64,000 nt of DNA from Octopus sinensis (Eukaryota). Shown here piece by piece: positions 1 to 53,859 of this stretch; positions within the stretch are counted from its first letter, which is position 1, and the number at the start of each line of letters is the position of its first letter. The position numbers were made by a program, and so were the translations under genes. The notes beneath the pieces were generated by a model that saw nothing but the letters and a program-made list of their open reading frames with translations, searched no databases and had not been told where the DNA came from. Location: the NCBI RefSeq assembly GCF_006345805.1, contig NC_042997.1, forward strand, positions 33,914,001 to 33,978,000, read 5' to 3'.

Positions 1-128
1 TATATTTGACTTGAGCTGAAAATCTTGGTAGCATGCACCACTTTTTAATGTAACATTGAAGATATATATATATATATATAGATATATATAGATATATAAG
101 ATATATATATATATATATAGATATATAA

Positions 129-2784: not shown

Positions 2785-3125
2785 GCGAAGGTGCATGGCT
2801 CAGGGGTTAGAGCTTTGGGCTCACAATCACGAGGTAGTGAGTTTGATTCTTGGACCGGGCTCTGTACTGTGTTCTTGAGCAAGACACTTTATTAAATGTT
2901 GCTTCAGTTCACTCAGCTGTGAAAATGAGTTGTGACATCACTGGTGCCAAGCTGTATTGGCCTTTGCTTTTCCCTTGGATAACATCAGTGGTGTGGAGAG
3001 GAGGAGGCTGGTATGCATAGGCGACTGCTGGTCTTCCTTAAACAACCTTTACCTGGACATGTGCCCCAGAGGGGAACTTTCTAGGTGCAACCCCATGGTC
3101 ATTCATGACCAAAGGGGGGTCTTTA
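2785..3125 (+). mobile_element. tRNA-derived SINE, family E (gcatggctcagtggttagag...gaccgaagggggtc)
   Basis: A-box-like tggctca(g)gggttagag and B-box-like gagtttgattc; homologous copies at 39904-40199, 42818-43115 and 49157-49752. Confidence 0.8.
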
Positions 3126-5151: not shown

Positions 5152-5574
5152 TCTGTTTCTTTATTACCGACAAGGAGCTAAACATAGAGGGGACAAACAA
5201 GGACAGACAAACGGATTAAGTCGATTACATCGACCCTAGTGCGTAACTGGTACTTAATTTATCGACCCCGAAAGGATGAAAGGCAAAGTCGACCTTGGCG
5301 GAATTTGAACTCAGAACATAAAGACAGACGAAATACCTATTTCTATTTCTTTATTACCCACAAGGAGCTAAACATAGAGGGGACAAACAAGGACAGACAA
5401 ACGGATTAAGTCGATTACATCGACCCTAGTGCATAACTGGTACTTAATTTATCAACCCCGAAAGGATGAAAGGCAAAGTCGACCTTGGCGGAATTTGAAC
5501 TCAGAACGTAACGACAGACGAAATACGGCTACGCATTTCGCCCGACATGCTGACATTTCTGCCAGATCGCCGCC
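5152..5574 (-). mobile_element. SINE family A, tandem dimer
   Basis: One full copy plus a duplicated 3' ~190 bp; the two halves share non-consensus bases (gaccttggcgg, ccctagtgc, ggagctaaac). Confidence 0.85.
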
Positions 5575-13345: not shown

Positions 13346-13699
13346 CAACCAACCGAGTATCCCCCCCCACTCCCTTGTCACGACCAAACCTTTTTCCAAT
13401 TATGTCAACAGCTATAAACTATACAAACGCATCCACCACTGAAGTTAAACAAAATTTGTTTTTATTCCCTCCACCACCACCTCCCTCTGAATAAAGTGAA
13501 ACCCATAAAAGTAAAAAAGATGATGATGATGATGATGATGATGATGATAATAATAATAATGGTTTGTGAAATCATTGGGTAAAAAGAATCACCACCACAA
13601 TAACAACAACAACAACAGCAACATAAAAGTTGTAGTAAACACATTACCGAAAGCAACAAACTCAACGACAATAATAGCGACAATAATTATCATTTCTCT

Positions 13700-13932
13700 T
13701 AATAATGATGATAGTAATAATAATAATAATAATAATGATGATAATAATAATGATAATAATGATAATAATAATAATGATAATGATAATAATAATAATAATG
13801 ATAATAATAATAATGATAATAATAATAATGATAATAATAATAATGATAGTAATAATGATAATAATAATGATAATAATAATAATAATAATAATAATGATAA
13901 TAATAATAATGATAATAATAATAATAATAGTA

Positions 13933-13968
<36 letters not shown>

Positions 13969-13970
13969 GT
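13700..13970. repeat. (AAT/GAT)n microsatellite
   Basis: Directly visible. Confidence 0.95.
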
Positions 13971-14239
13971 TCAGTATGAAAAATTCAAATGAAAATAAGG
14001 GTTTTCTTTCTCCTAGAAATCAAATCTATTCTCATCAGAAATGAAATTAAATATTAAAAAATATAAAGAAATTTTAAAATGAAAACAAAAAAAAAAGAAT
14101 ATGTAACAAAAGAATGTAATATTAGAAAAGAAGTAGGATACAATAGTGATGATGATGATGATGATGATGATGATGGGACAAGTGATGGTGGTGGTGGTGT
14201 TGGTGGTGTGGTCATGAAAATCGTAGCAGTAATTAATGT

Positions 14240-15110
14240 TGGTGTTGATGGTAGTAGTTGTGGTGATGATGGTGGTGGTGGTGGTGGTTGTGGTGGTGGG
14301 GGTGATAGTGGTGTTGGTATTGATAAAGATGAGTTTTATCACAGTATAGTGTTGGTAACAATGTTGTGACGATGCTGATGATGATAGTAGTGGTGATGGT
14401 GGTGATGGTGTTGGCGGTGGTACAGATAATGATGATAGCACTGGTGGTGGCGGTAGTAGTGGTGTTGGTGTCGAAGATGATGATGATGATGATGATGATG
14501 ATGGTAGTAATGGCGTTGGTTGTAATGACAGTGATGGCGTTGGTGGTGGTGCCGTTGCTGATGAGAGTAGTGAGAGTGGGGATGGTGGTGGTGGTATTGA
14601 TGATGGTTGTAGAGATGGTTGTAGAGATGGTTATAGTGGTAGTGATGATGGTGGCGATGTTGGTGATGATGATGATGATGATGATGGTGGTGGTGGGGAT
14701 GGTGATGGTGGTGGTGATGGTGATGATGGTGGTGGCGATGTTGGTGAGGATGATGATGATTGTGATGATGATGGTGATGGTGATGATGATGGTGATGATG
14801 ATGTTGGCGATGTTGGTGAGGATGATGATGATGATGATTGTGATGATGTGATGGTGATGGTGATGATGATGGTGATGGTGATGATGGTGATGGTGATGAT
14901 GATGATGGTGGCGATGTTGGTGAGGATGATGATGGTGATGATGATGATGATGATTGTGATGGTGGCATTGATGGTAATGATTACGATGACGATAGAATGG
15001 CATTGGCTGGTGAGGCTGGTATTGATGATGCTGACGAAGAAAGTAATTGTTGTGGTAGTGATGACACTGATGGCAGCAGCAGCAGTAGCAGTGTCATGAT
15101 GGAGTAGGGG
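14240..15110. repeat. (GAT/GGT)n cryptic trinucleotide block
   Basis: Source of the poly-H/I/M/S ORFs; no stop-free frame spans the block with recognisable protein content. Confidence 0.9.
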
Positions 15111-16150
15111 GTTACAGGTTATGAATAGCATTTAATGAGGTAATTTTTATTTCTCGTACTGATTAATTACTCGTTGTCGTTGATGACTGTTTGATAAGCT
15201 CTCCATAATGGCAGCTATGCCACCATAACCTGTTCAGATTGCTGTAATTCAGAATTTGTCCTCTGCGATTTGCCATGCAGCAAACATTCATCATCACCGT
15301 TGTTTATTGTTGTTGTTGTTGTTCTCGTCATTACCATTGCTGCCATGCTTGGATTGTTGTCGGTAGCGGTGGAGGCGGCGGCGGCGGCAACGGCAACGGT
15401 GGTGGCGATAACGATTATTGTCGTTATCATTATCATTATCATTATTAGTATTATTTCCCCCGTGGTGAATTGACATAGCCATTAAAAGCATCCGATAGAT
15501 AGAAAAGCCCTTGTCATATTTATTCTGGTTCTTTTGCACTCTGAGTTCATATCTCGCTTCATCCCGTTTCGGGGTTGGGGTTGGGGTAAGGGGGCTGCTC
15601 GTTAAATAAAGTATCAAACCGAAGATGGTAGTAGATTGGGTGGAACTGTTTTTACAGGTATTTGACAAGATTCTTTCCAAGATTAGGTGCCTAATTTAGC
15701 TCTTTATGTTCTGAGTTCAGAAGCTACCTAAGGATCTAGAACCAGAGCTAATCACCCATCCATGGGACCACAGCTAATTATGAAAGCTGCACTAAGTGGA
15801 AGGAGGAGGAGGAAAGGCTACAGTTGCAGATAGCTACTGTAGTTGAACAATGATTATTGTTATTCATCATCATTGTCACCAATATCATCATCATCATCAT
15901 CGTTTTAATGTTCACTTTTCTTCCATGCTTGAATGGGTTAGGTAGAACTCTTTGAGGCAAATTTTCTATGGCTGGATGTCCTTCCTGTTGTCATCAACCC
16001 TCACCTGTTTCCAAGCAAAGTGATATTCCTCCATGGATGGGCTTGTTTTCATGGTAGACTGGAAATAAAAGGCATTGCTTGTCTATTAGTGACACTCATT
16101 TGTAACTATTGGGTGTTCTCAAGACATGGAAGTACAAACGTACACATATA

Positions 16151-16562: not shown

Positions 16563-17219
16563 TACTTCCACATGCACACACATGTGCATGTAGAACACAC
16601 ACACATACATACGTACACACACACACACACACACACACATGCTCATATATGATGGGCTTCTTTCAGTTTCCATCAACCAAATCCATTTCACAAGGCTTTG
16701 ATATGTCTGGGGCTGTAGTAGAAGACACTTGCCCAAGGTGCCATGCAGTGGGACTGAACCTGGGACCGTGTTGTTGGGAAACAAACTTTTTACCTATACA
16801 TCTATGCCTGCGCCTTGCCACAAAATGGCAGTAAGAAGGAGAAGCAGTTTAACTACATCCTTTTACATATTGTGTTTAAATCCTGCCTGGTCAATCTCAC
16901 CTCTGTTCCCTCAGGAGCTGACATAGTAAAATACAACCCAAATACGGTCATCAGACATTTTTGTGCGTTCACATCATCTGAAATTGGTGACCTTGTGCAT
17001 GCCAATTGTAGGAAATCATTATTACTGTGATACCATCAACACCAACATTAATTACTACTACGATTTTCATGACCACACCACCAACACCACCATCATCACT
17101 TATCCCATCATCATCATCACTATTGTATCCTACTTCTTTTCTAATATTACATTCTTTTGTTACATTTTTTTTTGTTTTCATTTTAAAATTTCTTTATATT
17201 TTTAATATTTAATTTCATT

Positions 17220-17723
17220 AAATCAAATCAAACCAAAATCAAAATAGATGAACATCAATGGAATTTGTATCTTTGTGGTACCAGTGCCGGTGGCACATAA
17301 GAAAACCATCCGAACGTGGCTGTAGCCAGTACCGCATCGACTAGCCTCCGTGCTGTGGGCACGTAACAAACACCATCCGATCGTGGCCGTTCGCCAGCCT
17401 CGTCTGGCACCTGTGTTGGTGGCACATAAAAAACACCATCCGAGCGTGGTTGTCTGCCAGCCTTGTCTGGCACTTGTGTCGGTGGCACATAAAAAACACC
17501 ATCCGAGCGTGGCCGTTCGCCAGCCTCGTCTGGCACCTGTGTCGGTGGCACATAAAATCACCCACTACACTCGCGGAGTGGTTGGCGTTAGGAAGGGCAT
17601 CCAGCTGTAGAAACTTTGCCAGATCAGACTGGAGCCTGGTGCAGCCCCTGGTTTCCCAGACCCCGGTCGAACCATCCAACCCATGCTAGCATGGAAAACG
17701 GACGCTAAACGATGATGATGATG
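17220..17723 (+). mobile_element. RTE LINE 3'UTR copy (family D) with internal ~60-bp tandem repeats
   Basis: Starts at the (caaat)n module, carries three aaacaccatccga.cgtgg.. units and has a (gat)n tail. Confidence 0.85.
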
Positions 17724-24542: not shown

Positions 24543-25486
24543 CTTGTTCTTAGTCTTCATAAATCACTTGCCCGACGACCTCACGCAACACACCCTTCTA
24601 TTTGCCGACGATATCAAACTGGTCACTCCTCGAGGTAATATAGAGGATCTTCGTCGATGCCTCCACCAAATTTGGAAGTGGTCTAACGATTGGGACCCGT
24701 GTCTGAACGTGTCAAAGTGCTGTCATCTGCCTGTCGGCTCTACTCCTGCAACTCAACTTGATTTCGAGCCGGGTCGTCTGCTGCTGGAGAGGACCGATCA
24801 GGTAAAGGACCTGGTTATCTTGGTGGATCCCTCCTTTTCGCCTTCGGCCCAGTGCGTCCATGCTGCCAACAAAGCACGCGGAATTCTGTTCTTGATTCGA
24901 CGGTCATTCGGAATGCTCACAGCAGCCATATTCCTACCACTCTATGTCACGCTGGTGAGACCCATATTGGAGTATGGGATTCAAGCCTCTTCTCCTTATC
25001 TCCTCAAAGACATACAGCATCTCGAAAGAGTCCAGAAGCTGGCTACCCGCATGGTTCATGGTCTCAAAAATTTGTCCTACGAAGAAAGGCTGAGGACGCT
25101 CAACCTTTATTCTCTTGAAAGACGCAGCCGCCGTGGTGATCTCATTCTCGCCCACAACATCATAAGCGGAAAGTGTAACCTCTCGAAAGAGCTGTTCTTC
25201 ACTCCTGCTCCAGAGCGTCGGCTGCGGGGTCATTCCGAAAAGCTCTACCTGCAACGATTTCATCTCAATCGAAGGAGAGGAGCTTTCTCCGTCCGGGTTG
25301 CGGATCCGTGGAACAAGCTGCCAGACGAGATGGTGAAGATGCCGACGACCGCTTTGTTCAAAGCCTCCCTGAACCTCAAGTGGCCTGAACTCTTTACATG
25401 AACACCACCCTGTACTTAACTCCATGTCCCCCCACATGGCCTTGCTATTTGCTTTTGAGCCAAATTAACTAACTAACTAACTAACT
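24543..25486 (+). mobile_element. 5'-truncated CR1-clade LINE with (TAAC)n tail
   Basis: Contains the RT C-terminal ORF, a 3'UTR and the ctaactaactaac tail; 3' ends of the same family occur at 49396-49671 and 63707-63855. Confidence 0.9.
24544..25401 (+). CDS. CR1 LINE ORF2 reverse transcriptase, C-terminal 285 aa (transposon fragment, not a host gene)
   Basis: LFADDIKL catalytic motif, VKDL.ILVD, LY.TLVRPILEYG, LERVQKLATRMV and LYSLERR..RGDLI are characteristic CR1 motifs. Confidence 0.85.
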   Translation: MFLVFINHLPDDLTQHTLLFADDIKLVTPRGNIEDLRRCLHQIWKWSNDWDPCLNVSKCCHLPVGSTPATQLDFEPGRLLLERTDQVKDLVILVDPSFSPSAQCVHAANKARGILFLIRRSFGMLTAAIFLPLYVTLVRPILEYGIQASSPYLLKDIQHLERVQKLATRMVHGLKNLSYEERLRTLNLYSLERRSRRGDLILAHNIISGKCNLSKELFFTPAPERRLRGHSEKLYLQRFHLNRRRGAFSVRVADPWNKLPDEMVKMPTTALFKASLNLKWPELFT

Positions 25487-30246: not shown

Positions 30247-30650
30247 AGGAGTGGCCGTGTGGTAAGTAGCTTGTTTACCAACCACATGGTTCCGGGTTCA
30301 ATCCCACTGCGTGGCACCTTGGGCAAGTGTCTTCTACTATAGCCTCGGGTCGACCAAAGCCTTGTGAGTGGATTTGGTAGATGGAAACTGAAAGAAGCCC
30401 GTTGTATATATGTATATATATATATATATATATAATGTATATATATGTGTGTGTGTGTCTGTGTTTGTCCCCCTAGCATTGCTTGATAACCGATGCTGGT
30501 GTGTTTATGTCCTCGTAACTTAGCAGTTCGGCAAAAGAGACCGATAGAATAAGTACTGGGCTTACAAAGAATAAGTCCCGGGGTCGAGTTGCTCGATTAA
30601 AGGCGATGCTCCAGCATGGCCACAGTCAAAATGACTGAAATAAGTAAAAA
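30247..30650 (+). mobile_element. SINE family B
   Basis: Match to family B; tail replaced by an A-rich run. Confidence 0.88.
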
Positions 30651-31190: not shown

Positions 31191-31604
31191 TTACTCTTTA
31201 CTCTTTTACTTGTTTCAGTCATTTGACTGCGGCCATGCTGGAGCACTGCTTTTAGTCGAGCAAATCGACCCCAGGACTTATTCTTTGTAAGCCCAGTACT
31301 TATTCTATCGGTCTCTTTTGCTGAACCGTTAAGTGACGGGGACGTAAACACACCAGCATCGGTTGTCAAGCAATGCTAGGGGGACAAACACAGACACACA
31401 AACACCCACACACATACATATATATACATATATACATATATACGACAGGCTTCTTTCAGTTTCCGTCTACCAAATCCACTCACAAGGCATTGGTCGGCCT
31501 GGGGCTATAGCACAAGACACTTGCCCAAGGTGCCACGCAGTGGGACTGAACCCGGAACCATGTGGCTGGTTAGCAAGCTACTTACCACACAGCCACTCCT
31601 GCGC
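31191..31604 (-). mobile_element. SINE family B
   Basis: Reverse-complement match. Confidence 0.9.
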
Positions 31605-37033: not shown

Positions 37034-37909
37034 TATGTATATATATATGTATATAAGTTACGTCCACAGTGCTTTGTGCTTTTAACCTGGCACCAGCACA
37101 TTAAAAGTACTCACCATTATTATATACATATATATACATTGTTGGAACATATTCAAGAAGGATTCTGATTAGAGCTTTGTTTATAGTGTGATTCTGCCTT
37201 CCTTCTTTGGCTTGATTTCAGATTTTCATAGAACCAAAGGCTTTGTACATACAAGTGCATGTGAACACATGTGCATGTACACATGCATACAGGTATGGCA
37301 ATGTGCTTAAAAGGTTCACTCCCCAACTACATAGTTTCGGGTTTACTTCCACTGCATGGCACCTTGGGCAAGTCCTTTTGCTATGACTCTAGGCTGATCA
37401 AACTTATGTGAGTTAATTTGGTAAACCTGTTATGTGTGTGTGTGTGTGTGTCTGAAAAAGAAGTAATTTCTACTCTTCTCCTCTGGAAGCCATCTACTCG
37501 CAATACCAGAGGGCGCACACTCTCCTACCCTGATGTAATCTCCAGGGATACAGGCATCCAGCAACAGGACCTCCGTAATGCCATGATGGACCATGAAGTC
37601 TGGCGTAGCATGGTAAATTCTATTGTCTCGACCACGGTCGAACAATGATGATGATGATGATGTAAGTGTGTGCGTGCAGTATGAAAATTGTAAGCTATGA
37701 GTAGTATTATTGTTACTTTATCTGTCAACAGACCTTCTGCTCATTTTAAGCTGTTGAAGATGTGGGAAATAAAAGATCCCTTATTTGGAAAACAGGTAAG
37801 GGTTAGCAACAGGAAAGGCATCTGGCTGTAAAACAATGCCTCAGTAATGTATTCATCTAACATATTCTTGTAGAGTGAAACAGATGCAAAATGGACTAAC
37901 TAATATATA

Positions 37910-38140
37910 TATTTCTTTACTACCCACAAGGGGCTAAACATAGAGGGGACAAGCAAGGACAGACAAACGGATTAGGTCGATTACATCAACCCCAGTACGA
38001 AACTGGTACTTTATTTATCGACCCCGAAAGGATGAAAGGCAAAGTCGACCTCGGCGGAATTTGAACTCAGAACGTAACGGCAGACGAAATACCACTAAGC
38101 ATTTCGCCCGGCGCGCTAACGTTTCTGCCAGCTCACCACC
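37910..38140 (-). mobile_element. SINE family A with 14-bp TSD
   Basis: TSD ctaactaatatata at 37896-37909 and 38141-38154. Confidence 0.92.
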
Positions 38141-38897
38141 CTAACTAATATATACATTATAGTCATAGATATGTGGTTAAGAAGTTTACTTTTCAACCAC
38201 ATGGTTTTGGGTTCAGTTCCACTGTGTGGCACCTTGGGTAGCTATCTTTTTATTATAACTAGAGGACTGTGGACGTAACTTTACACTGAATTCTGAAGAG
38301 TTTTGACTAACAGGAATTTTGTAAAAAATATTTAACTGCTGCAGCCTGTTTCTTGTGTTGCAGTTTGTTAATTGTGATGTTAGTGATTTTTTTTCTTCAG
38401 CTTCAGCAGTATCTCTGCAGCATTCTTAAGAGTTTTCATTTAGGCTGCAATGAGTTGTTGGAACATATTCAAGAAGGATTCTGATTAGAGCTTTGTTTAT
38501 AGTGTGATTCTGCCTTCCTTCTTTTGCTTGACTTCAGATTTTCATAGAACCAAAGTCTTTGCACAGTTCTATTACACAGAATGGTGATATTGGAAATATT
38601 ACCTGCCTACACCAGTTTGCTGAATATAGTTATCAGTTACTCTCAGCCACCTGTATATTAATTATGGGAAGCCATGTACTTTTCCCATAGTAAGACACCT
38701 GTGCTGGTCCCTATGTCAAACTTTAGCCTTTTGACACTTGGCATAAAACCACTTCCCCTTCTCAGGTGCTCCCCCGCTACTTAGATTGTCAAGAGACTTT
38801 TTTGTGTGCCCTTTTCTTGTTTAGTATGTTACTTGGCAACCTCACTTATGCCAATCACATGAAGAAAAGCACCCAGTACACTAAAATGGCTGGCATT

Positions 38898-39906
38898 ACG
38901 AAGAAGAGCATCCAGCTGTAGAAATATTGCCAAAGCTAACATTGGAGCTCGATGTGGCCCTGCACCTTGCAAGATCTTGTCAAACCATCCAATCCATGCC
39001 AGCATGGAAAAAAGGATGTTAAATGATGATGAATCTCATGCTTGTTTTATAAAGTTAATTCCCAAAGTGCAATGGAAGCTTTTTTTTTCTGAATTTTGAT
39101 GGCTTCACTGTTACATTGACCAGATTATTTATGAAGATTAAGAGCAGAAGTGGCCCAATTGTAGAGTTGACACTCTAACCACTGAGCCATGCGTCTTCAC
39201 AATATATGTATATATGTATATAATAATGGAGGGTACCTTTAATGTGCTGGTGCCAGGTTAAAAGCACAAAGCACACACTGTAAAGAGGTCGGCATTAGGA
39301 AGGGAATACACATGCACACACAACAGTCTTCCTTCAGTTTCCATCTACCAAATCCATTCACAAGGCTTTGGTTTGCCCAAGGCTATAGTAGAAGACACAT
39401 GTCCAAGGTACCATGCAGTGGAACTGAACCCAGAACCATGTGGTTGGAAAGCAAGCTTCTCACCATACAGCCATGCCTGCACCTATATATTGATGATGGT
39501 AGTGGACCTCATGTAGTTTTAATGTGTTTCATGGATCTATCTACTTGATTTGTTACAGTGCCAGTAGGAGATACATGGTCACCCATTCATATCAAGACCT
39601 ATAAGTCATGGCCTAGCAATGCATCAGTGTCACAGAACTCTACAATTGGGCCACTTCTACTCTTAATCTTCATAAATAATCTGGTCAATGTAACAGTGAA
39701 GCCATCAAAATTCAGAAAAAAAAAGCTTCCATTGCACTTTGGGAATTAACTTTATAAAACAAGCATGAGATTCATCATCATTTAACATCCTTTTTTCCAT
39801 GCTGGCATGGATTGGATGGTTTGACAAGATCTTGCAAGGTGCAGGGCCACATCGAGCTCCAATGTTAGCTTTGGCAATATTTCTACAGCTGGATGCTCTT
39901 CTTCGT
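38898..39906. repeat. 271-bp inverted repeat (arms 38898-39168 and 39636-39906)
   Basis: Arms are reverse complements with one mismatch found by eye; the spacer is 467 bp. Confidence 0.95.
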
Positions 39907-40199
39907 GAGGTTGTGAGTTCGAATCCCGGACCAGGCTGCGTGTTGTGTTCTTGAGCAAGACACTTTATTTCACATTGCTCCAGTTCACTCAGCTGTAGAA
40001 ATGAGTTGCGACGTCACAGGTGCCAAGCTGTATCGGCCCTTGCCTTTCCCTTGGACAACATCGGTGACATGGAGAGGGGAGGCCGGTATGCATGGGCGAC
40101 TGCTGGTCTTCCATAAAAACAACCTTGCCCAGACTAGTGCCTCAGAGGGTAACTCTCTAGGTGCAAACCCATGGTCAGTGTCTGACCGAAGGGGGTCAC
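39904..40199 (+). mobile_element. SINE family E body; its head is displaced and inverted at 39169-39200
   Basis: The body starts gtgaggttgtgagttcgaatccc; 39169-39200 is the reverse complement of gtgaagacgcatggctcagtggttagagtgtc. Confidence 0.85.
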
Positions 40200-42371
40200 C
40201 TCATACATGTATATATAATTTTATGTTGAGAAACACTTTATGGTTGTACAGTTATTTCAATGCTAGGGCATTTTCTTAAAATTCAAATTAATACAAAATC
40301 ATCGTTCAATATTTATGAAAAAATTTTATGTGTAAAAAAGACTAGAGAGTGTCGTAAAAATCCTTCTATGTCCCAAGTTCAAATCTCACTGGGTTACGTT
40401 TGCCTTTTACTCATTCTGACTTCAATAAAGAAGACATCATTCAAATACTTGGGATTGATTTATTGGACAGTTTCTTTTCCCATTTGATAAAAATCATCAT
40501 TATTAAATGATTTTGGTGCTTTCTATTTCTTGTAAATGGATAAGTCGAACATTACAAAGAAATGGGTGCAGTGAGAGAAAGCTAGATCTGCTGGAATTGA
40601 TAGTTTGTTTTGGCATGTTTGAAAAACAAAACAAAAGAAAGTCAAAAATCAAAAAAAAGAAAAAGAATTAAGAAAAAAAAAAAAAAAAGAAGCCAGCTTA
40701 TCTTCAGTTTTATCAAACTATTTATGTGATGCAACTTTCGGTCACTGTAATGTTCATTTATCATGTGAATGAAGTTTTTTTTTTTTTTTTCTTTTCTTTT
40801 TGTCTTTCATAGCAATTCAGTTTATATAATAATGATGAAGACACATGTCTTTTGAATGCTTAGGTGTTTTTTCCTCTCACTCTTTATTTAATTTAGCTCA
40901 CATTATGTTGTTTTCTGAAGTTCAGGTAAAAAAAAGAAAAAGAAAAAAGAAAGAAAAAGCAAAAACAAAATAAAACTATACCCCCCACCCAAAAAAAAAA
41001 CAACAACAAAAAACAAAAAAAAAACAATACCACCCTATTTCAGAAATGTTTTTTTTTTTTTTACTTTTAGTTTTGATATTCTAAGAGAAAGTTTTGTCTT
41101 CTCATCTGCAGTAAAGCTAATTATTGTTTTGTTCATTTCTAGAAGACAACCTTTTTTTTTTTTTTTTTGTTTTGTTACTTTAGTAGATCACATGTGTCTT
41201 TTGTCTCCTTCTCATTCCAAAATTCTAAGTAATTCCCCAGTATTTTTGGTTACTTTCCTTGCCCAAAGAAAAGTCATTAGTTATTTTGTCCAGCCAAATG
41301 GCTACAGATATTTTATAACTGGCTGCAACATGATGGATCAAAGAAGTTGTTGGAAAAGAACTTCTCTAATACATATGTAGATAAATTCATGACAGTTCAC
41401 AGCCTAGCGGTTAGGGTGTTGTCATGTTCACGAGTTCACTGGTTTGATTTCCAGACTTATTGATGCACGATGTCCTTGAGAAAGGTATGTGGTTTTGTGT
41501 TGTTCTAGTTTGCTCAGCTAAGAGTGAGTACGTGTTAGCTTCTAGGGCAGCTCTTTCTCTCTCCATCTGTCACATCTTTGATGTTATGCTGCAAGGGCAG
41601 AGAGGTGTTTATATCTGCTTGCAACAAAACAATTAGCAAAAGTAGGGTGCATGCTACAAGATGATACTTGCTTGCAAATAATGAGCCAACTTCTAAATTC
41701 ATGGCAGAACTTTTGGGTCAAGAAATGAAGTGATAGAGCAATATGTGGATCTATGTGCATTCTATGAGAATGGTCCTAGGTCTAAGTGAATTTTAGGGGT
41801 CAACATGAGAGATTCTGTATAGTAACCTAACTTGTTCAGTGTAGTTGCTAAATCTATTTCGAAGGTAAAAGTGATATATATTTTTCAAGCTAAAACTGTT
41901 AAATACAGAATTTTATGCCACCAGAACATCATGCCACCTTGGCCTACACTAGAAATGCTTCTTTACCCTCTTGGGACACCTGGGCTGATTGATTGGCCCA
42001 GGTGATACAATCTGAAAAGATTCTGAGGCTAATCCATCAGCTCAATGAAACAAACATTTTGATTTGTAATAGTCAATCAGAGATTGTCTTTCAGTAGATA
42101 TAATATAAAACTATATAATATATATAGTTTTACATACTAATTAGTAGTTTTAGGCACGTTATCCTTTGTTTTCTACTTGCACCCATCAATTTCAATCTCA
42201 ACTGGAAAAACATTTTGGTCTTTTTGACCTCACATACCAAAATACTGTGTGTCTCAAAAGGGTTAAATGCTTGGTTAGTTTTGTTAGTTGTATTGTTTAT
42301 GTACTACAGGTCTATTCAAGTATGACTGATCTGAACTGCATTACAGCAACAATGTTTTCTCATTGACTCAT

Positions 42372-43944: not shown

Positions 43945-45250
43945 CTGAACTTTGCCCAGGCTATTCTTATTCTTGTGGTAACACTCTCTGAGCATCCACC
44001 CCCACTACAGAGTTGGTCACCTAGGTAGCAGAAGCTATCAACTACTTCTAGTTTCTTCCCCTGGCATGTGATAGAGTCTGTTTTCTGAGCATCTGTGGCG
44101 TTTATTGCCCCTGTGCATCTTCTGCATGTGAAAGCTATCTTCCCAGTTAATCTTCCTTTGATATTGCTGCACCTCTTATGTGTCCATAGCTTACACTGGG
44201 TACATCTTATGGAGTTTCTACCTACACCTTTTCTACAGATCGAGCAGGGCCACCTACCTGAAGGGGTGTGTGATGTGTTTGCCTTCCTACTTACTAGAAC
44301 TTTGTCTTTGCAACATTGATTCTAAGGCTCTTCGATTCCTAAACCTTGCTTCCACAATTGAAATTTTTTCATAGTTCTGGTAGTGATTCTGCTATGAGGG
44401 CCAAGTCATCAGCATAGAGGAGCTCCCAGGGTTAACCTGTCTTGAATTCCTCTGTTATTGCCTGGAGGACTATGATGAATAAGAGGAGGATGAGGGCTGA
44501 TCCTTGGTGGACCCCTTCTTCTACCCTGAATTCTTCACTATACTCATTTCTAATCCTAATCCTACTCATGGCATCTCTGTATAGGGCCTGTACAGTCCCT
44601 ATTAACCATTCGTCAAACCCCAGTTTCCACATTGCCTACCAGATAAGGGATTAGGGGACCCTGTTAAAGGCTTTCTCCAAGTCAAGAAAAGCCAAGTATA
44701 GGGGTTTATCTTTGGCTAGGTATTTCTCCTGCAGTTGCCTTACCAGAAATATAGCAACAGTGGTGCTTCTGCCTTGCACAGAACCAAACTGCATCTCATC
44801 TAAGCAGACTCTCACCCTAATTAGTTGGACTATGACCCTCTCTGTGACCTTCATCACCTGATCCAGCAGTTTGATACCCCTGTCGTTATGTCTATCTAAA
44901 GCATCATCTTTACCTATGTAGCAGTTGACTATGGTGCTGCTACGCCAGTCATTGGGTATACCTCCATCATGAGCTGCCTGATTTACAATGCAGGTGAGGG
45001 TGACTAGGCTATGGCCCACACCACCAGCTGGAGGCTTTTCCTGTCTTCATATCCTTAATTGCTTTATCTACCAGGGTGCTGATTTGGCAGGCTCTCCTCC
45101 TCCCATTCATTCTCCACATTCAGCAGCCTTTCATAATGGCCACTCCAAGCCTCTTTCTTTTCAGAATCATTAAAAGCAAGTGCACCATCATCCATGCGAA
45201 CACATTTCTCTCCTGTGACATCACAATTTTCTCTCACACTGTCTTGCAAT
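43945..45250 (-). mobile_element. RTE-clade LINE reverse-transcriptase fragment (frameshifted) with an internal PHD-type finger
   Basis: DWRSSTIVNCY.GK.DALDR.N.RGIKLL, QFG..QGRST..AIFLVRQLQEKY, AFLDLEKAFNRVP, GVHQGSAL..LLFIIV, WELLYADDL equivalent, then C4HC3 and FCYLGD. Confidence 0.9.
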
Positions 45251-48606: not shown

Positions 48607-49011
48607 GGCAGAAATGTTAGCACGCCGGCTGAAATGCGTAGCCGTATTTCGTCTGCTGTCACGTTCTGAGTTCAAATTCCGCCAAGGTCAACTTTACCTT
48701 TCATCCTTTCGGGGTTGATTAAATAAGTACCAGTTAAACTCTGGGGTCGATATAATCGACTTAATCCGTTTGTCTGTCCTTGTTTGTCCTCTCTGTGTTT
48801 AGCCCCTTGTGGGTAGTAAAGAAATAGGTATTTCGTCTCCTGTTATGTTCTGAGTTCAAATTCCGCCAAGGTCAACTTTACCTTTCATCCTTTCGGGGTC
48901 GATTAAATAAGTACCAGTTACACTCTGGGGTCGATATAATCGACTTAATCCGTTTGTCTGTCCTTGTTTGTCCTCTCTGTGTTTAGCCCCTTGTGGGTAG
49001 TAAAGAAATAG
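48607..49011 (+). mobile_element. SINE family A tandem dimer
   Basis: The 3' ~180 bp is duplicated; both halves share non-consensus bases (ccgccAaggtcAactttAcc, actctgggg). Confidence 0.88.
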
Positions 49012-49156
49012 GTAGAGCATTTGAAGTTCATGCTTTGTGATTGGGGAGAGATTTAGGGTAATAAGGAATAAGAGAAGATGGGTTCGAGTGTTGGAGAGGT
49101 GAGAGGATCCCATGACATCCCTTGTGGTATAATGGATATAGGCAGTATATAGTGAA

Positions 49157-49752
49157 GGTGCATGGCTCACTGGTTAGAGTGTCAGGCTCACAATCATGTG
49201 GTTGTGAGTTTGATTTCTGGGGCAGGTTGTGTGTTGTGCTCTTGAGCAAGACACTTTATTTCACTTTGCTCCAGTTCACTCCGGTGTAAAAATGAGTTGT
49301 CATGTCACAGATGCCAAACTGTATTGGCGTTTGCCTTTTCCTTGGATAACATCAGTGACATGGAGAGAGGAAGCTGTTATGCATGGGAAATTGCAAGCGT
49401 CGGCTGCGGGGTCACTCCGAAAAGCTCTATCTGCGACGATTTCATCTCAATCAAAAGAGAGGGGCTTTCTCCGTCCGGGTTGTAGTTCCGTGGAATAAGC
49501 TGCCGGACGAGATAGTGAAGATGCTGACGACCGCTCGGTTCAAAGTCTCCCTTGACCACAAGTGGCCTGAACTCTTTACATGAACACCACCCTGTACATA
49601 ACTCCACGTCCCCCTATATGGCCTTGCTTTTTGCTTTTTGAGCCAAAAAATTAACTAACTAATTAACTAACAATCTTGCTGGGACCTGTGCCTTAGAGGG
49701 GAACCTTCTAGGTGCAATCCTATGGTCATTCATGGTTGAAGGGGGTCTTTAC
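49157..49752 (+). mobile_element. SINE family E interrupted by a CR1 3' fragment
   Basis: Family E sequence lies before 49396 and after 49671. Confidence 0.8.
49396..49671 (+). mobile_element. CR1 LINE 3' end with (TAAC)n tail
   Basis: RRLRGHSEKLYLRRFHLNQKRGAFSVRVV.PWNKLPDE..WPELFT*, nearly the same as the end of the ORF at 25401. Confidence 0.9.
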
Positions 49753-51028: not shown

Positions 51029-51456
51029 TCATCATCATCATCGTTTAACGTCTGCTTTCCATGCTAGCATGGGTTGGACGGTTCAACTGGGGTCTGGGAA
51101 GCCCGAAGGCTGCACCAGGCCAGTCAGATCTGGCAGTGTTTCTACAGCTGGATGCCCTTCCTAACGCCAACCACTCTGAGAGTGTAGTGGGTGATTTTAT
51201 GTGCCACCGACACAGGTGCCAGACGAGGCTGGCGAACGGCCACGGTCGGATGGTGTTTTTTACGTGCCACCGGCACAGAGGCCAGGCAAGGCTGGCACGG
51301 CCACGATCGGATGGTGTTTGTTACGTGCCACCAGCACGGAGGCCAGTCAATGCGGTACTGGCTACGGCCACGTTCGGATGGTTTTCGTATGTGCCACCGG
51401 CACTGGTACCACAAAACTACAAATTCCATTAATGTTCATCGAGTTTGCTTTTGATT
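51029..51456 (-). mobile_element. RTE LINE 3'UTR copy (family D)
   Basis: Reverse-complement match, with the (cat)n tail at the left end. Confidence 0.85.
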
Positions 51457-51793: not shown

Positions 51794-53859
51794 CGGTGGC
51801 ACATAAAGACACCATCTGAAGACCCGGCGACGTAGTCAGTCCACCTGTGCATACCTTCCCTCTTATGACACTTGTGAAGACCTGTTGAGGCAGAGGCAAG
51901 TGTGTGACACTTGTGGAGGTGTGTCGGTGGCACATAAGACACCATCCGAAGACCGGCGACGTAGTCAGTCCACCTGTGCATACCCTCCCCTTATGACACT
52001 TGTGAAGACCTGTTGAGGCAGAGGCAAGTGTGTGTGACACTGTGGAGACCTGTTGAGGCAAGTGTGTGACCCTGTGAAGACCTGTTGAGGCAAGTGAAAA
52101 TCAAACCAAATCAAAATAGATGAACATCAATGGAATTTGTATTTTGTGGTTCCAGTACCGGTGGCACACAAGAAAACCATCCGAACGTGGCCGTAGCCAG
52201 TACCGCATCGACTGGCCTCCGTGCTGTGGGCACAACAAACACCATCTGATCGTGGCCGTTCGCCAGCCTCATCTGGCACCTGTGTCGGTGGCACATAAAA
52301 ACACCATCCGAAGACCCGGCGACGAGTAGTAGTCCACCTGTGCATACCTTCCCTCTTATGACACTTGTGAAGACCTGTTGAGGCAAGTGTGTGACAGTTG
52401 AGAAGTCCTGTTGAGACAGAGGCAAGTGTGTGACACTTTGTGAAGACCTGTTGAGGCAGAGGCAAGTGTGTGACACTTGTGGAGACCTGTTGAGGCAAGT
52501 GTGTGACACGTGTGACACTTGTGAAGACCTGTTGGGGCAAGTGAAAATCAAACCAAACCAAAATAGATGAACATCAATGGAATTTGTATCTTTGTGGTTC
52601 CAGTACCGGTGGCACACAAGAAAACCATCCGATCGTGGCCGTTCGCCAGCCTCATCTGGCACCTGTGTCGGTGGCACATAAAAACACCATCCGAAGACCC
52701 GGCGACGTAGTCAGTCCACCTGTGCATACCTTCCTACTTATGACACTTGTGAAGACCTGTTGAGGCAAGTGTGTGACACTTGTGTAGACCTGTTGAGGCA
52801 AGTGAAAATCAAAATCAAATCAAATCAAATCAAACCAAATCAAAATAGATGAACATCAATGGAATTTGTATCTTTGTGGTACCAGTACCGGTGGCACACA
52901 AGAAAACCATCCGAACGTGGCCGTAGCCAGTACCGCATCGACTGGCCTCTGTGATGTGGGCACATAACAAACACCATCCGATCGTAAGACCTGTGAAGAC
53001 CTGTTGAGGCAAGTGAAAATCAAATCAAATCAAATCAAAATAGATGAACATCAATGGAATTTGTATCTTTGTGGTACCAGTGCCGGTGGCACACAAGAAA
53101 ACCATCCGAACGTGGCCGTAGCCAGTACCGCATCGACTGGCCTCCATGCTGTGGGCACGCAACAAACACCATCCGATCGTGGCCGTTCGCCAGCCTCATC
53201 TGGCACCTGTGTCGGTGGCACATAAAAACACCTCCGAAGACCCGGCAAGACTAGTCAGGCCATAACCCGTGGCCCCTACCTGGGACGTAGTCAGTCCACC
53301 TGTGCATACCTTCCTTCTTGTGACACTTGTGAAGACCTGTTGAGGCAAGTGAAAATCAAATCAAATCAAAACAAATCAAAATAGATGAACATCAATGGAA
53401 TTTGTATCTTTGTGGTACCAGTGCCGGTGGCACACAAGAAAATCATCCGAACGTGGCCGTAGCCAGTACCGCATAGACTGGCCTCCGTGCTTTGGGGACG
53501 TAACAAACACCATCCGATCGTGGCCGTCGCCAGCCTCATCTGGCACCTGTGTCGGTGGCACATAAAAACACCATCCGAGCGTGGCCGTCTGCCAGCCTCG
53601 TCTGGCACCTGTGTCGGTGCATGGCACATAAAAACACCATCCGAGCGTGGCCGTTCGCCAGCCTCGTCTGGCACCTGTGTCGGTGGCACATAAAATCACC
53701 CACTACACTCTCGGAGTGGTTGGCGTTAGGAAGGGCATCCAGCTGTAGAAACACTGCCAGATCTGACTGGCCTGGTGCAGCCTTCGGGCTCCCCAGACCC
53801 CAGTTGAACCGTCCAACCCATGCTAGCATGGAAAACGGACGCTAAATGATGATGATGAT
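51789..53859 (+). repeat. Tandemly amplified RTE 3'UTR array ending in an intact family D tail
   Basis: Five copies each of the acgtagtcagtccacctgtgcatacc module and the gtgaaaatcaaa..tagatgaacatcaatgg or truncated module, plus (gaggcaagtgtgtgacac) subrepeats. Confidence 0.9.

What the first reader, a model, noticed from the sequence alone, without database searches (positions are those of the whole stretch)
38898..39906. Near-perfect 271-bp inverted duplication produced by an inversion that split a SINE
Arms 38898-39168 and 39636-39906 differ at one base. The SINE E head (gtgaagacgcatggctcagtggttagagtgtc) sits inverted at 39169-39200, while its body resumes at 39904. The structure therefore reads A-[head,Z] inverted-A inverted-body, i.e. 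an inversion of A-Z-head that duplicated A. The junctions show microhomology: aactc(t)acaat vs the SINE's expected ..ctcacaat, and cgt. Near identity implies a very recent event, possibly still polymorphic. If transcribed it would form a 271-bp hairpin stem.
Basis: partly seen in the sequence, partly recalled or inferred. Interest (0 to 1): 0.7.

Follow-up and report, generated by a model that had tools for sequence, protein, structure and literature searches.

The report
Small inversion-duplication that split an octopus SINE
A recent, roughly 1-kb DNA rearrangement in a repeat-rich, non-coding stretch of an octopus genome flipped about 470 bases and made an inverted copy of the 271 bases next to them, cutting a SINE retroposon in two; it is a clean example of a known kind of mutation and not a functional element.

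Summary
Arms 38898-39168 and 39636-39906 are reverse complements over 271 nt with one mismatch (39145/39659). A SINE head (positions 1-32) lies inverted at 39169-39200. The same SINE resumes at position 44 at 39904, with 11-13 nt missing.

An older repeat ('F') runs unbroken across the outer edge of the left arm. The right arm leaves F at exactly that base and joins the SINE body. So the left arm is the parent copy and the right outer junction is new.

An inferred ancestor L-A-rc(Z)-head-11 nt-body, put through two template switches, reproduces the observed 1,801 nt with one difference.

This is a known mutation class. It matches four-point event '3-1-2-4', the human complex-variant class 'dupINVdel', and the one-sided inverted duplication at Drosophila inversion breakpoints.

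I favour replicative template switching, helped by a short quasi-palindrome at the breakpoints. Staggered breaks give the same product.

No reads, alleles or outgroups could be reached. Assembly artefact, polymorphism and transcription therefore remain untested. No function is indicated, and interest is low to moderate.

The parts
38864..39032 (+). 3' part of an old, diverged copy of a dispersed repeat family ('F', ending in GATGATGA). It crosses the outer boundary of the left arm.
   Evidence: Alignment with six other F copies. The flank 38864-38897 matches F right up to 38897, with score 37 against shuffles of 13 +/- 2. About 10 copies occur in the window. F segments are also found in Octopus bimaculoides gene models.
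38898..39168 (+). Arm A, the parental copy. It consists of the F 3' part (about 38898-39032) plus 136 nt that are single-copy in the window.
39169..39200 (-). SINE E head, positions 1-32, inverted. It includes the A-box-like TGGCTCAGTGG at 39179-39189.
   Evidence: The A box was read directly from the sequence.
39201..39635 (-). Spacer Z, the inverted former 5' flank of SINE E. It contains a copy of another tRNA-like SINE ('G', about 39306-39482, minus strand), a TATACATA-type simple repeat next to the SINE E head, and 145 nt (39491-39635) that are single-copy in the window.
39636..39906 (-). Arm A', the derived inverted copy of A. It differs from A at 39659.
39904..40197 (+). SINE E body, position 44 to the 3' end (...GACCGAAGGGGGTC). 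The B-box-like GAGTTCGAATCCC lies at 39915-39927. The first 3 nt (CGT) overlap arm A'.
39158..39174 (.). Junction J1 (39168|39169), arm A joined to the inverted SINE head. No inserted bases, 1 nt of strict microhomology, flanked by imperfect homology to SINE positions 27-43.
39900..39910 (.). Junction J3 (39903-39907), the outer end of arm A' joined to SINE position 44-46. There are 1-3 nt of microhomology (CGT) and no inserted bases.

Best explanation
This is a real germline rearrangement in a TE-rich, apparently non-coding part of an octopod genome, made in one step. The inferred ancestral order was L - A - rc(Z) - SINE E (head, 11 nt, body) - R. That order has one copy of A and an intact SINE E, inserted just after the simple-repeat tail of another SINE. 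During replication or repair synthesis the growing strand copied L and A up to 39168 (point 1). It then switched to the complementary strand at SINE position 32 (point 2). It copied backwards through the head, the 435-nt flank and all of A (738 nt, to point 3 = 38898). It then switched back to the original strand at SINE position 44-46 (point 4). The product carries an inverted duplicate of A (271 nt), an inverted 467-nt spacer and an 11-13-nt deletion in the SINE. The first switch was probably helped by a pre-existing short imperfect inverted match between the end of A and SINE positions 27-43. The second used 1-3 nt of microhomology. The structure itself is shown. The ancestral order, the one-step history and the replicative mechanism are inferred. 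The rearrangement separates the SINE's A and B boxes onto opposite strands, so that copy can no longer act as a Pol III unit. Nothing else suggests a function. The one mismatch in 271 nt, against about 15% divergence among SINE E copies, makes the event much younger than the repeats it rearranged.
For: The arms are 270/271 complementary. Head (1-32) and body (44 to end) complement each other. The rebuilt 337-nt SINE aligns end to end with copy 2787 at 84% identity. F-family continuity across L|A, lost at A'|body, polarises the event. Applying points 3<1<2<4 to the inferred ancestor regenerates window 38600-40400 with one difference, at 39659, once the CGT overlap is treated as microhomology. 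Neither junction has inserted bases. The 11-mer beside the head is closer to the lost SINE 11-mer than 99.8% of window 11-mers. The inferred ancestral 21-mer at point 1 matches the reverse complement of SINE 27-43 at 16 of 17 positions with 3 gaps. Only 4 of 40,000 random window 21-mers score as well. Event type '3-1-2-4', an inverted repeat around an inverted spacer, is a described outcome of template switching (PMC5453318).
Against: No outgroup, second allele or read data could be reached, so the ancestral state is inferred only. The product is identical to that of the staggered-break model. The copied fragment (738 nt) is far longer than the tens of bp typical of documented short template switches. 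The homeology test used a window chosen after seeing the data, and the unanchored versions are not significant (p = 0.065; p = 0.15-0.23). The SINE's target-site duplication is uninformative because both flanks are TATACATA-type simple sequence.
Confidence: 0.5

Rival explanations
1. The ancestor and product are the same, but the event arose by breakage. Two single-strand nicks 271 nt apart on opposite strands bracketed A, and a double-strand break cut the SINE. The 5' overhangs were filled in, the freed A-rc(Z)-head fragment was re-joined in reverse, and 11-13 nt were lost at the SINE break. This is the staggered-break model of Ranz et al. 2007.
For: The model predicts exactly this product. 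In Drosophila the inverted duplications at inversion breakpoints have a median length of 321 bp (range 46 bp to 1.9 kb). In 12 of 18 inversions the duplication came from only one breakpoint (PMC1885836). The 271-nt one-sided duplication here fits that range.
Against: The model needs three coordinated breaks within 750 bp, unwinding of 271 bp, and recapture of a free 738-bp fragment. The documented cases are chromosome-scale inversions. The breakpoint homeology is not required by fill-in plus classical end joining, although microhomology-mediated joining would tolerate it.
Confidence: 0.25
2. The structure arose in two steps. First an inverted copy of A was inserted into the SINE (event '3-2-1-4'), giving L-A-rc(Z)-head-rc(A)-body. 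Later, recombination between the two 271-nt arms flipped the spacer.
For: The junction sequences would be identical to those observed. Inverted repeats can flip their spacers, and type 3-2-1-4 is the commonest repeat-creating switch in the human-chimp comparison.
Against: It needs two rare events inside the very short time allowed by 1 mismatch in 271 nt. The one-step 3-1-2-4 path gives the observed orientation directly.
Confidence: 0.07
3. The structure is an assembly or library artefact, for example a chimeric or template-switched molecule carried into the consensus, and does not exist in the animal.
For: Near-perfect inverted duplications are a known long-read and whole-genome-amplification artefact class (PMC6218980; PMC12870357). 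No read evidence could be examined here.
Against: Foldback artefacts have one junction, with the second segment mapping within about 200 bp on the other strand and never returning. This structure has two junctions, a 467-nt offset, a return to the forward strand, an 11-13-nt deletion, and one mismatch between the arms. There are no Ns or gaps nearby.
Confidence: 0.1
4. The head and the body are unrelated SINE E fragments that happen to end and begin at neighbouring positions. The inverted repeat would then be a separate inverted duplication, or a transposon with long terminal inverted repeats.
For: 5'-truncated SINE copies are common, so the body alone is unremarkable. This rests on general knowledge of SINEs.
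Against: The head ends and the body begins within 11 nt of each other in a roughly 335-nt element, and each lies exactly at an arm boundary. 3'-truncated SINE heads are unusual. There is no target-site duplication around 38898-39906. The arm is half an older F element that continues outside the arm. The rest of the arm has no other copy in the window.
Confidence: 0.03
5. A retrotransposition 'twin-priming' inversion produced an inverted 5' part and a direct 3' part of one retroposed RNA.
For: The topology is of twin-priming type: an inverted head, a direct body and a small deletion at the inversion point.
Against: The two SINE parts are separated by 706 nt. That stretch includes a 99.6% copy of the locus's own neighbouring DNA, part of it single-copy in the window. 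A retroposed RNA from elsewhere could not carry that sequence.
Confidence: 0.02

Closest known systems
Four-point template-switch event type '3-1-2-4' (mirror '1-3-4-2'), Loytynoja & Goldman 2017, PMC5453318
   Same: The output is F1 plus the reverse complement of fragment 2->3 plus F3, with points ordered 3<1<2<4. That yields a new inverted repeat around an inverted spacer and hairpin potential. The order requires an inter-strand switch.
   Different: The scale differs: the copied fragment is 738 nt and the arms 271 nt, against events of tens of bp. Here the reference (ancestral) sequence is inferred from a split SINE rather than observed in a sister genome.
Inverted duplications at inversion breakpoints under the staggered-break model (Ranz et al. 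2007, PMC1885836)
   Same: Ancestrally single-copy DNA from one breakpoint is duplicated in inverted orientation on both sides of the inverted segment. The duplication size falls within the reported 46 bp to 1.9 kb range (median 321 bp). One-sided duplication is common. The duplication itself polarises the event.
   Different: The inverted segment is about 0.5-0.7 kb rather than a chromosome-scale inversion. The arms are 99.6% identical against about 88% in the fixed Drosophila cases. The organism is a cephalopod.
Human complex structural-variant class 'dupINVdel', a CNV-flanked inversion (Collins et al. 2017, PMC5338099)
   Same: There is a duplication on one side (271 nt), an inversion (467 nt) and a deletion on the other side (11-13 nt).
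   Different: That class was defined from large variants detected with jumping libraries. This example is sub-kilobase and is seen only in one assembly.
Hairpin-RNA / de novo stem-loop birth by template switching (PMC8794818, PMC10710096)
   Same: A single mutation creates a perfect long stem. The predicted fold has a 271-bp stem at -630 kcal/mol.
   Different: There is no evidence of transcription, processing or conservation here. The stem is far longer than a miRNA precursor.

Membership tests
Four-point template switch, type 3-1-2-4 | The derived sequence equals ref[..1] + revcomp(ref[3..2]) + ref[4..], with order 3<1<2<4 | tested here: met
   Reconstruction from the inferred ancestor reproduces 38600-40400 with 1 difference. 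The ancestor itself is inferred.
Four-point template switch, type 3-1-2-4 | The ancestral (reference) state is observed in a sister genome or allele | not testable with these tools
   No orthologous or allelic sequence was found.
Four-point template switch, type 3-1-2-4 | Short-range event, with a 2->3 fragment of tens of bp inside one fork | tested here: not met
   The 2->3 fragment is 738 nt, although all four points lie within 750 nt. It therefore works like this class at a larger scale.
Inversion with breakpoint inverted duplication (staggered-break class) | An inverted duplicate of ancestrally non-repetitive breakpoint DNA flanks the inverted segment | tested here: met
   The arms flank the inverted head plus Z. 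136 nt of each arm has no other copy in the window, and the rest is one specific old F copy.
Inversion with breakpoint inverted duplication (staggered-break class) | The event was not mediated by recombination between inverted copies of a repeat | tested here: met
   The arm's unique part shows no similarity to SINE E above shuffles. The only homology at the breakpoints is a 17-21-nt imperfect match.
Inversion with breakpoint inverted duplication (staggered-break class) | The segment is inverted relative to an outgroup arrangement | tested here: inconclusive
   Inversion is inferred internally from one SINE whose head and body face opposite ways. No outgroup was available.
DNA transposon / foldback element with long terminal inverted repeats | A target-site duplication flanks the element, the arms are element-specific, and other copies exist | tested here: not met
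   The flanks differ (..ggcatt | gaggtt..). The left arm is the continuation of an F element lying outside it. No other copy of the unique arm part or of the spacer end occurs in the window.
Twin-priming inversion of a retroposed element | The inverted 5' part and the direct 3' part of the same RNA abut each other within one insertion | tested here: not met
   The two parts are separated by 706 nt that include a copy of the adjacent genomic DNA.
tRNA-derived SINE (the split element 'E') | A tRNA-like head with A and B boxes, and dispersed diverged copies | tested here: met
   TGGCTCAGTGG and GAGTTCGAATCCC were read from the sequence. Four copies at 83-91% identity occur in the window. A related segment occurs in an O. 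bimaculoides gene model. It is not a tRNA gene and matches no Rfam family. The target-site duplication is ambiguous.
Long-read foldback artefact | A single junction, with the second segment mapping within about 200 bp on the opposite strand and no return to the forward strand | tested here: not met
   There are two junctions, a 467-nt offset, a return to the forward strand, a small deletion and one arm mismatch. The reads themselves were not available.
Hairpin-RNA / endo-siRNA or ADAR-substrate locus | A long inverted repeat that is transcribed and processed or edited | not testable with these tools
   The fold predicts a 271-bp stem. No expression, small-RNA or editing data were available.

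The most novel reading that the evidence does not exclude
The locus may record a kilobase-scale inter-strand template switch in a cephalopod germline, seeded by a chance 17-21-nt quasi-palindrome between unique DNA and a SINE. It may still be segregating. If it lies in a transcribed intron or UTR, it has created at one stroke a perfect 271-bp double-stranded RNA. Such an RNA would be a strong substrate for the very active cephalopod ADAR editing system or for small-RNA production. If events like this are common in the SINE-saturated octopus genome, they would be an overlooked source of new hairpins and micro-inversions.
Probability: 0.12. Interest if true: 0.45.

Novelty: new member of a known kind. 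Interest (0 to 1): 0.25.

Why it matters
The SINE acts as a built-in marker, so this young example shows the ancestral order, the direction of change and all the breakpoints of an inversion-plus-inverted-duplication without needing an outgroup. It suggests that the mutation class described in humans and flies also operates in cephalopods, at a scale between short template switches and chromosomal inversions. In practice it is a candidate polymorphic marker and a locus where short-read mapping will misbehave. It has no evident gene-level consequence.

Tried and rejected
1. I tried to obtain alleles or orthologues and got nothing.
   - Exact look-ups of the two longest local ORFs found no record.
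   - A protein search with concatenated stop-to-stop translations across all four boundaries gave no hits.
   - A 24-nt junction pattern had no match in metagenome contigs.
   - The prokaryotic and viral collections were not tried, because the DNA is octopod.
2. Recombination between inverted SINE copies is rejected. The unique part of the arm has no similarity to SINE E beyond shuffles. An apparent TGGGCCACT... match in the multiple alignment was chance.
3. A second, degenerate SINE E head at the Z/A' boundary is rejected. An unanchored alignment is not significant and does not extend into the A-box region.
4. A TIR transposon is rejected. There is no target-site duplication, and the arm continues an outside repeat.
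5. Twin priming is rejected (see rivals).
6. The SINE E target-site duplication could not be used to prove that head and body share one insertion. Both flanks are TATACATA-type simple repeat.
7. I considered whether the 11-mer AACTCTACAAT in both arms is SINE-derived. That would need a third switch onto the nascent strand, so treating it as part of ancestral A is more economical. The lost SINE 11-mer cannot be recovered.
8. Rfam and tRNA scans found nothing in the window.

Full report
**What is there**

Window 38898-39168 and 39636-39906 are reverse complements over 271 nt. They differ at exactly one base, a non-CpG transition at 39145/39659. The match ends abruptly on all four sides. The spacer is 467 nt.

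In a self-comparison of the whole window this is the only repeat of 100 nt or more at 99% identity or above. Every other inverted pair within 3 kb is at most 97% identical and consists of copies of dispersed families. Chance is not a candidate explanation.

**Host and setting**

The window has no tRNA genes and no Rfam matches. Its only Pfam hits among the long ORFs tested are reverse-transcriptase fragments.

Translated pieces of two of its repeat families occur at 78-83% identity inside Octopus bimaculoides UniRef gene models. The DNA is therefore octopod, and the locus lies in SINE/LINE-rich sequence with no evident exon.

**The split SINE**

The reverse complement of 39169-39200 is GTGAAGACGCATGGCTCAGTGGTTAGAGTGTC. 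This is the first 32 nt of a tRNA-like SINE ('E'). Other copies lie at 2787-3118, 49152-49387 and 43098-42815.

At 39904 the plus strand reads CGTGAGGTTGTGAGTTCGAATCC... and continues colinearly with those copies to ...GACCGAAGGGGGTC at about 40197. All three other copies have 11 nt (A/GGGCTCACAAT) between those two points.

So head and body are complementary parts of one element, lacking 11-13 nt and facing opposite ways. Joined through the consensus 11-mer, they give a 337-nt SINE that aligns end to end with copy 2787 at 84% identity. The A-box-like motif (39179-39189, minus strand) and the B-box-like motif (39915-39927, plus strand) are now on opposite strands about 730 nt apart.

**Polarity**

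The first roughly 135 nt of arm A belong to a diverged copy of another dispersed family ('F'), which has about 10 copies in the window.

The alignment with six F copies shows that F continues leftward through 38897|38898 into the flank. The 34 nt up to 38897 align to F with a score of 37, against 13 +/- 2 for shuffles. The DNA beyond arm A' shows nothing.

The left arm therefore sits in its original context. The right arm is a copy cut off in mid-F and joined to the SINE body. The remaining 136 nt of the arm and the last 145 nt of the spacer have no other copy in the window.

**Reconstruction**

The simplest ancestor is L - A - rc(Z) - head - 11 nt - body - R. It has a single A. It also has SINE 'G' (now inverted at about 39306-39482) and SINE E in the same orientation, with E inserted beside a TATACATA-type tail.

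I applied the four-point template-switch operation to this ancestor. With the start of A as position 1, point 3 = 1, point 1 = 271, point 2 = 738 and point 4 = 750. This regenerates window 38600-40400 with one difference, once the 3-nt CGT overlap is treated as microhomology.

[quoted passage not shown] In the vocabulary of human complex variants it is a 'dupINVdel' (PMC5338099).

The same product follows from the staggered-break model for Drosophila inversions. There the inverted duplications have a median length of 321 bp, and in 12 of 18 cases they come from one breakpoint only (PMC1885836).

**Junctions**

Neither new junction has inserted bases.

At J1 (39168|39169) the 11-mer beside the head, AACTCTACAAT, is 3 edits from the lost SINE 11-mer. 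Only 0.2% of window 11-mers are that close.

The inferred ancestral sequence at point 1 is ATTGTAGAGTTCTGTGACACT. It matches the reverse complement of SINE positions 27-43 at 16 of 17 positions with three gaps, and 4 of 40,000 random window 21-mers score as well. That test window was chosen after the fact. The unanchored versions are not significant, so I treat the match as suggestive of a pre-existing quasi-palindrome that guided the first switch.

At J3 the overlap is CGT. Other copies read CAT or CAC there, so the overlap counts as 1-3 nt.

**Mechanism**

I favour inter-strand template switching (about 0.5). One event explains the duplication, the inversion and the deletion. All four points lie within 750 nt, and the junctions show annealing-type signatures.

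Staggered breaks with fill-in and end joining (about 0.25) cannot be separated from this on the product alone. A two-step path, inverted insertion followed by a spacer flip through arm-arm recombination, is possible but less economical.

**Rejected alternatives**

- A TIR transposon is excluded by the absence of a target-site duplication and by the arm being part of an outside repeat.
- SINE-SINE ectopic recombination is excluded because the arm has no SINE E homology.
- Twin priming is excluded because the two SINE parts are separated by 706 nt that include a copy of the adjacent genomic DNA.
- A simple long-read foldback artefact is not met. It would have one junction and no return to the forward strand.

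A more complex artefact cannot be excluded without reads (about 0.1).

**Age and consequences**

One difference in 271 nt compares with about 15% divergence among SINE E copies and about 25% between this F copy and others. The event is therefore far younger than the repeats involved. Gene conversion between the arms could also keep them alike. Polymorphism is plausible but untested.

If transcribed, the region folds into a 271-bp stem (-630 kcal/mol). Nothing here shows that it is transcribed.

**What could not be done**

No allelic or orthologous sequence was reachable. Exact ORF look-ups, a junction-ORF protein search and a metagenome pattern scan all returned nothing.

**Verdict**

The structure is a new instance of a known mutational class, without indicated function. 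Interest is low to moderate, mainly as an unusually legible, very young example in a cephalopod.

Noticed in passing
window 37055-37249 (with 38263-38281, 38455-38565, 39199-39274): This stretch is a mosaic of pieces that recur near the finding. 37069-37142 matches the reverse complement of 39199-39274 at 92%; that is the DNA flanking the SINE E head inside the spacer. 37139-37249 matches 38455-38565 at 96% in direct orientation. 37055-37073 matches the reverse complement of 38263-38281, but over only 19 nt, so weakly. The pieces overlap by 4-5 nt at their joins and are not high-copy in the window. It may be an older local duplication or serial template switch, or it may be tails of a low-copy SINE subfamily.
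   Followed up: partly
window 24544-25401 (+) and 44651-45019 (-): These ORFs are reverse-transcriptase fragments of non-LTR retrotransposons. The best database relatives carry RVT_1 plus endonuclease domains at 50-53% identity. They are possible autonomous partners of the SINEs.
   Followed up: partly
window 51031-51260 / 53630-53859, also 481-712 and 17217-17722 / 53355-53859: These are young copies of the F family, 92-98% identical to each other. The 51-54 kb region holds internally repeated arrays of F-related units. By contrast, the F copy inside arm A is only about 73-75% identical to them.
   Followed up: no
window 30247-30630 and 31222-31600: This is a second sizeable inverted repeat, about 384 nt per arm at 91-92% identity with a 591-nt spacer. 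It is made of two SINE G-family copies in opposite orientation. The identity is typical of the family, so these are probably independent insertions rather than a duplication.
   Followed up: partly
window 48644-49014 and 5152-5526: Each site holds a head-to-tail tandem duplication of about 185 nt at 97% identity. The first lies just upstream of SINE E copy 49152.
   Followed up: no
window 13566-15131: This low-complexity stretch of trinucleotide-type repeats yields long artificial His-, Asn-, Thr- and Ile-rich ORFs on both strands. It is not coding.
   Followed up: no
window 49152-49747: SINE E copy 49152 is itself interrupted. Its body matches to 49387 and resumes at 49669-49747, which implies an insertion of about 280 nt in that copy.
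   Followed up: no
window 38000-38135 (-): This is a copy of a further tRNA-like SINE family, reading ...gttcaaattccgccgaggtcgactttgcctttcatcc on the minus strand. It lies about 0.8 kb upstream of the finding.
   Followed up: no
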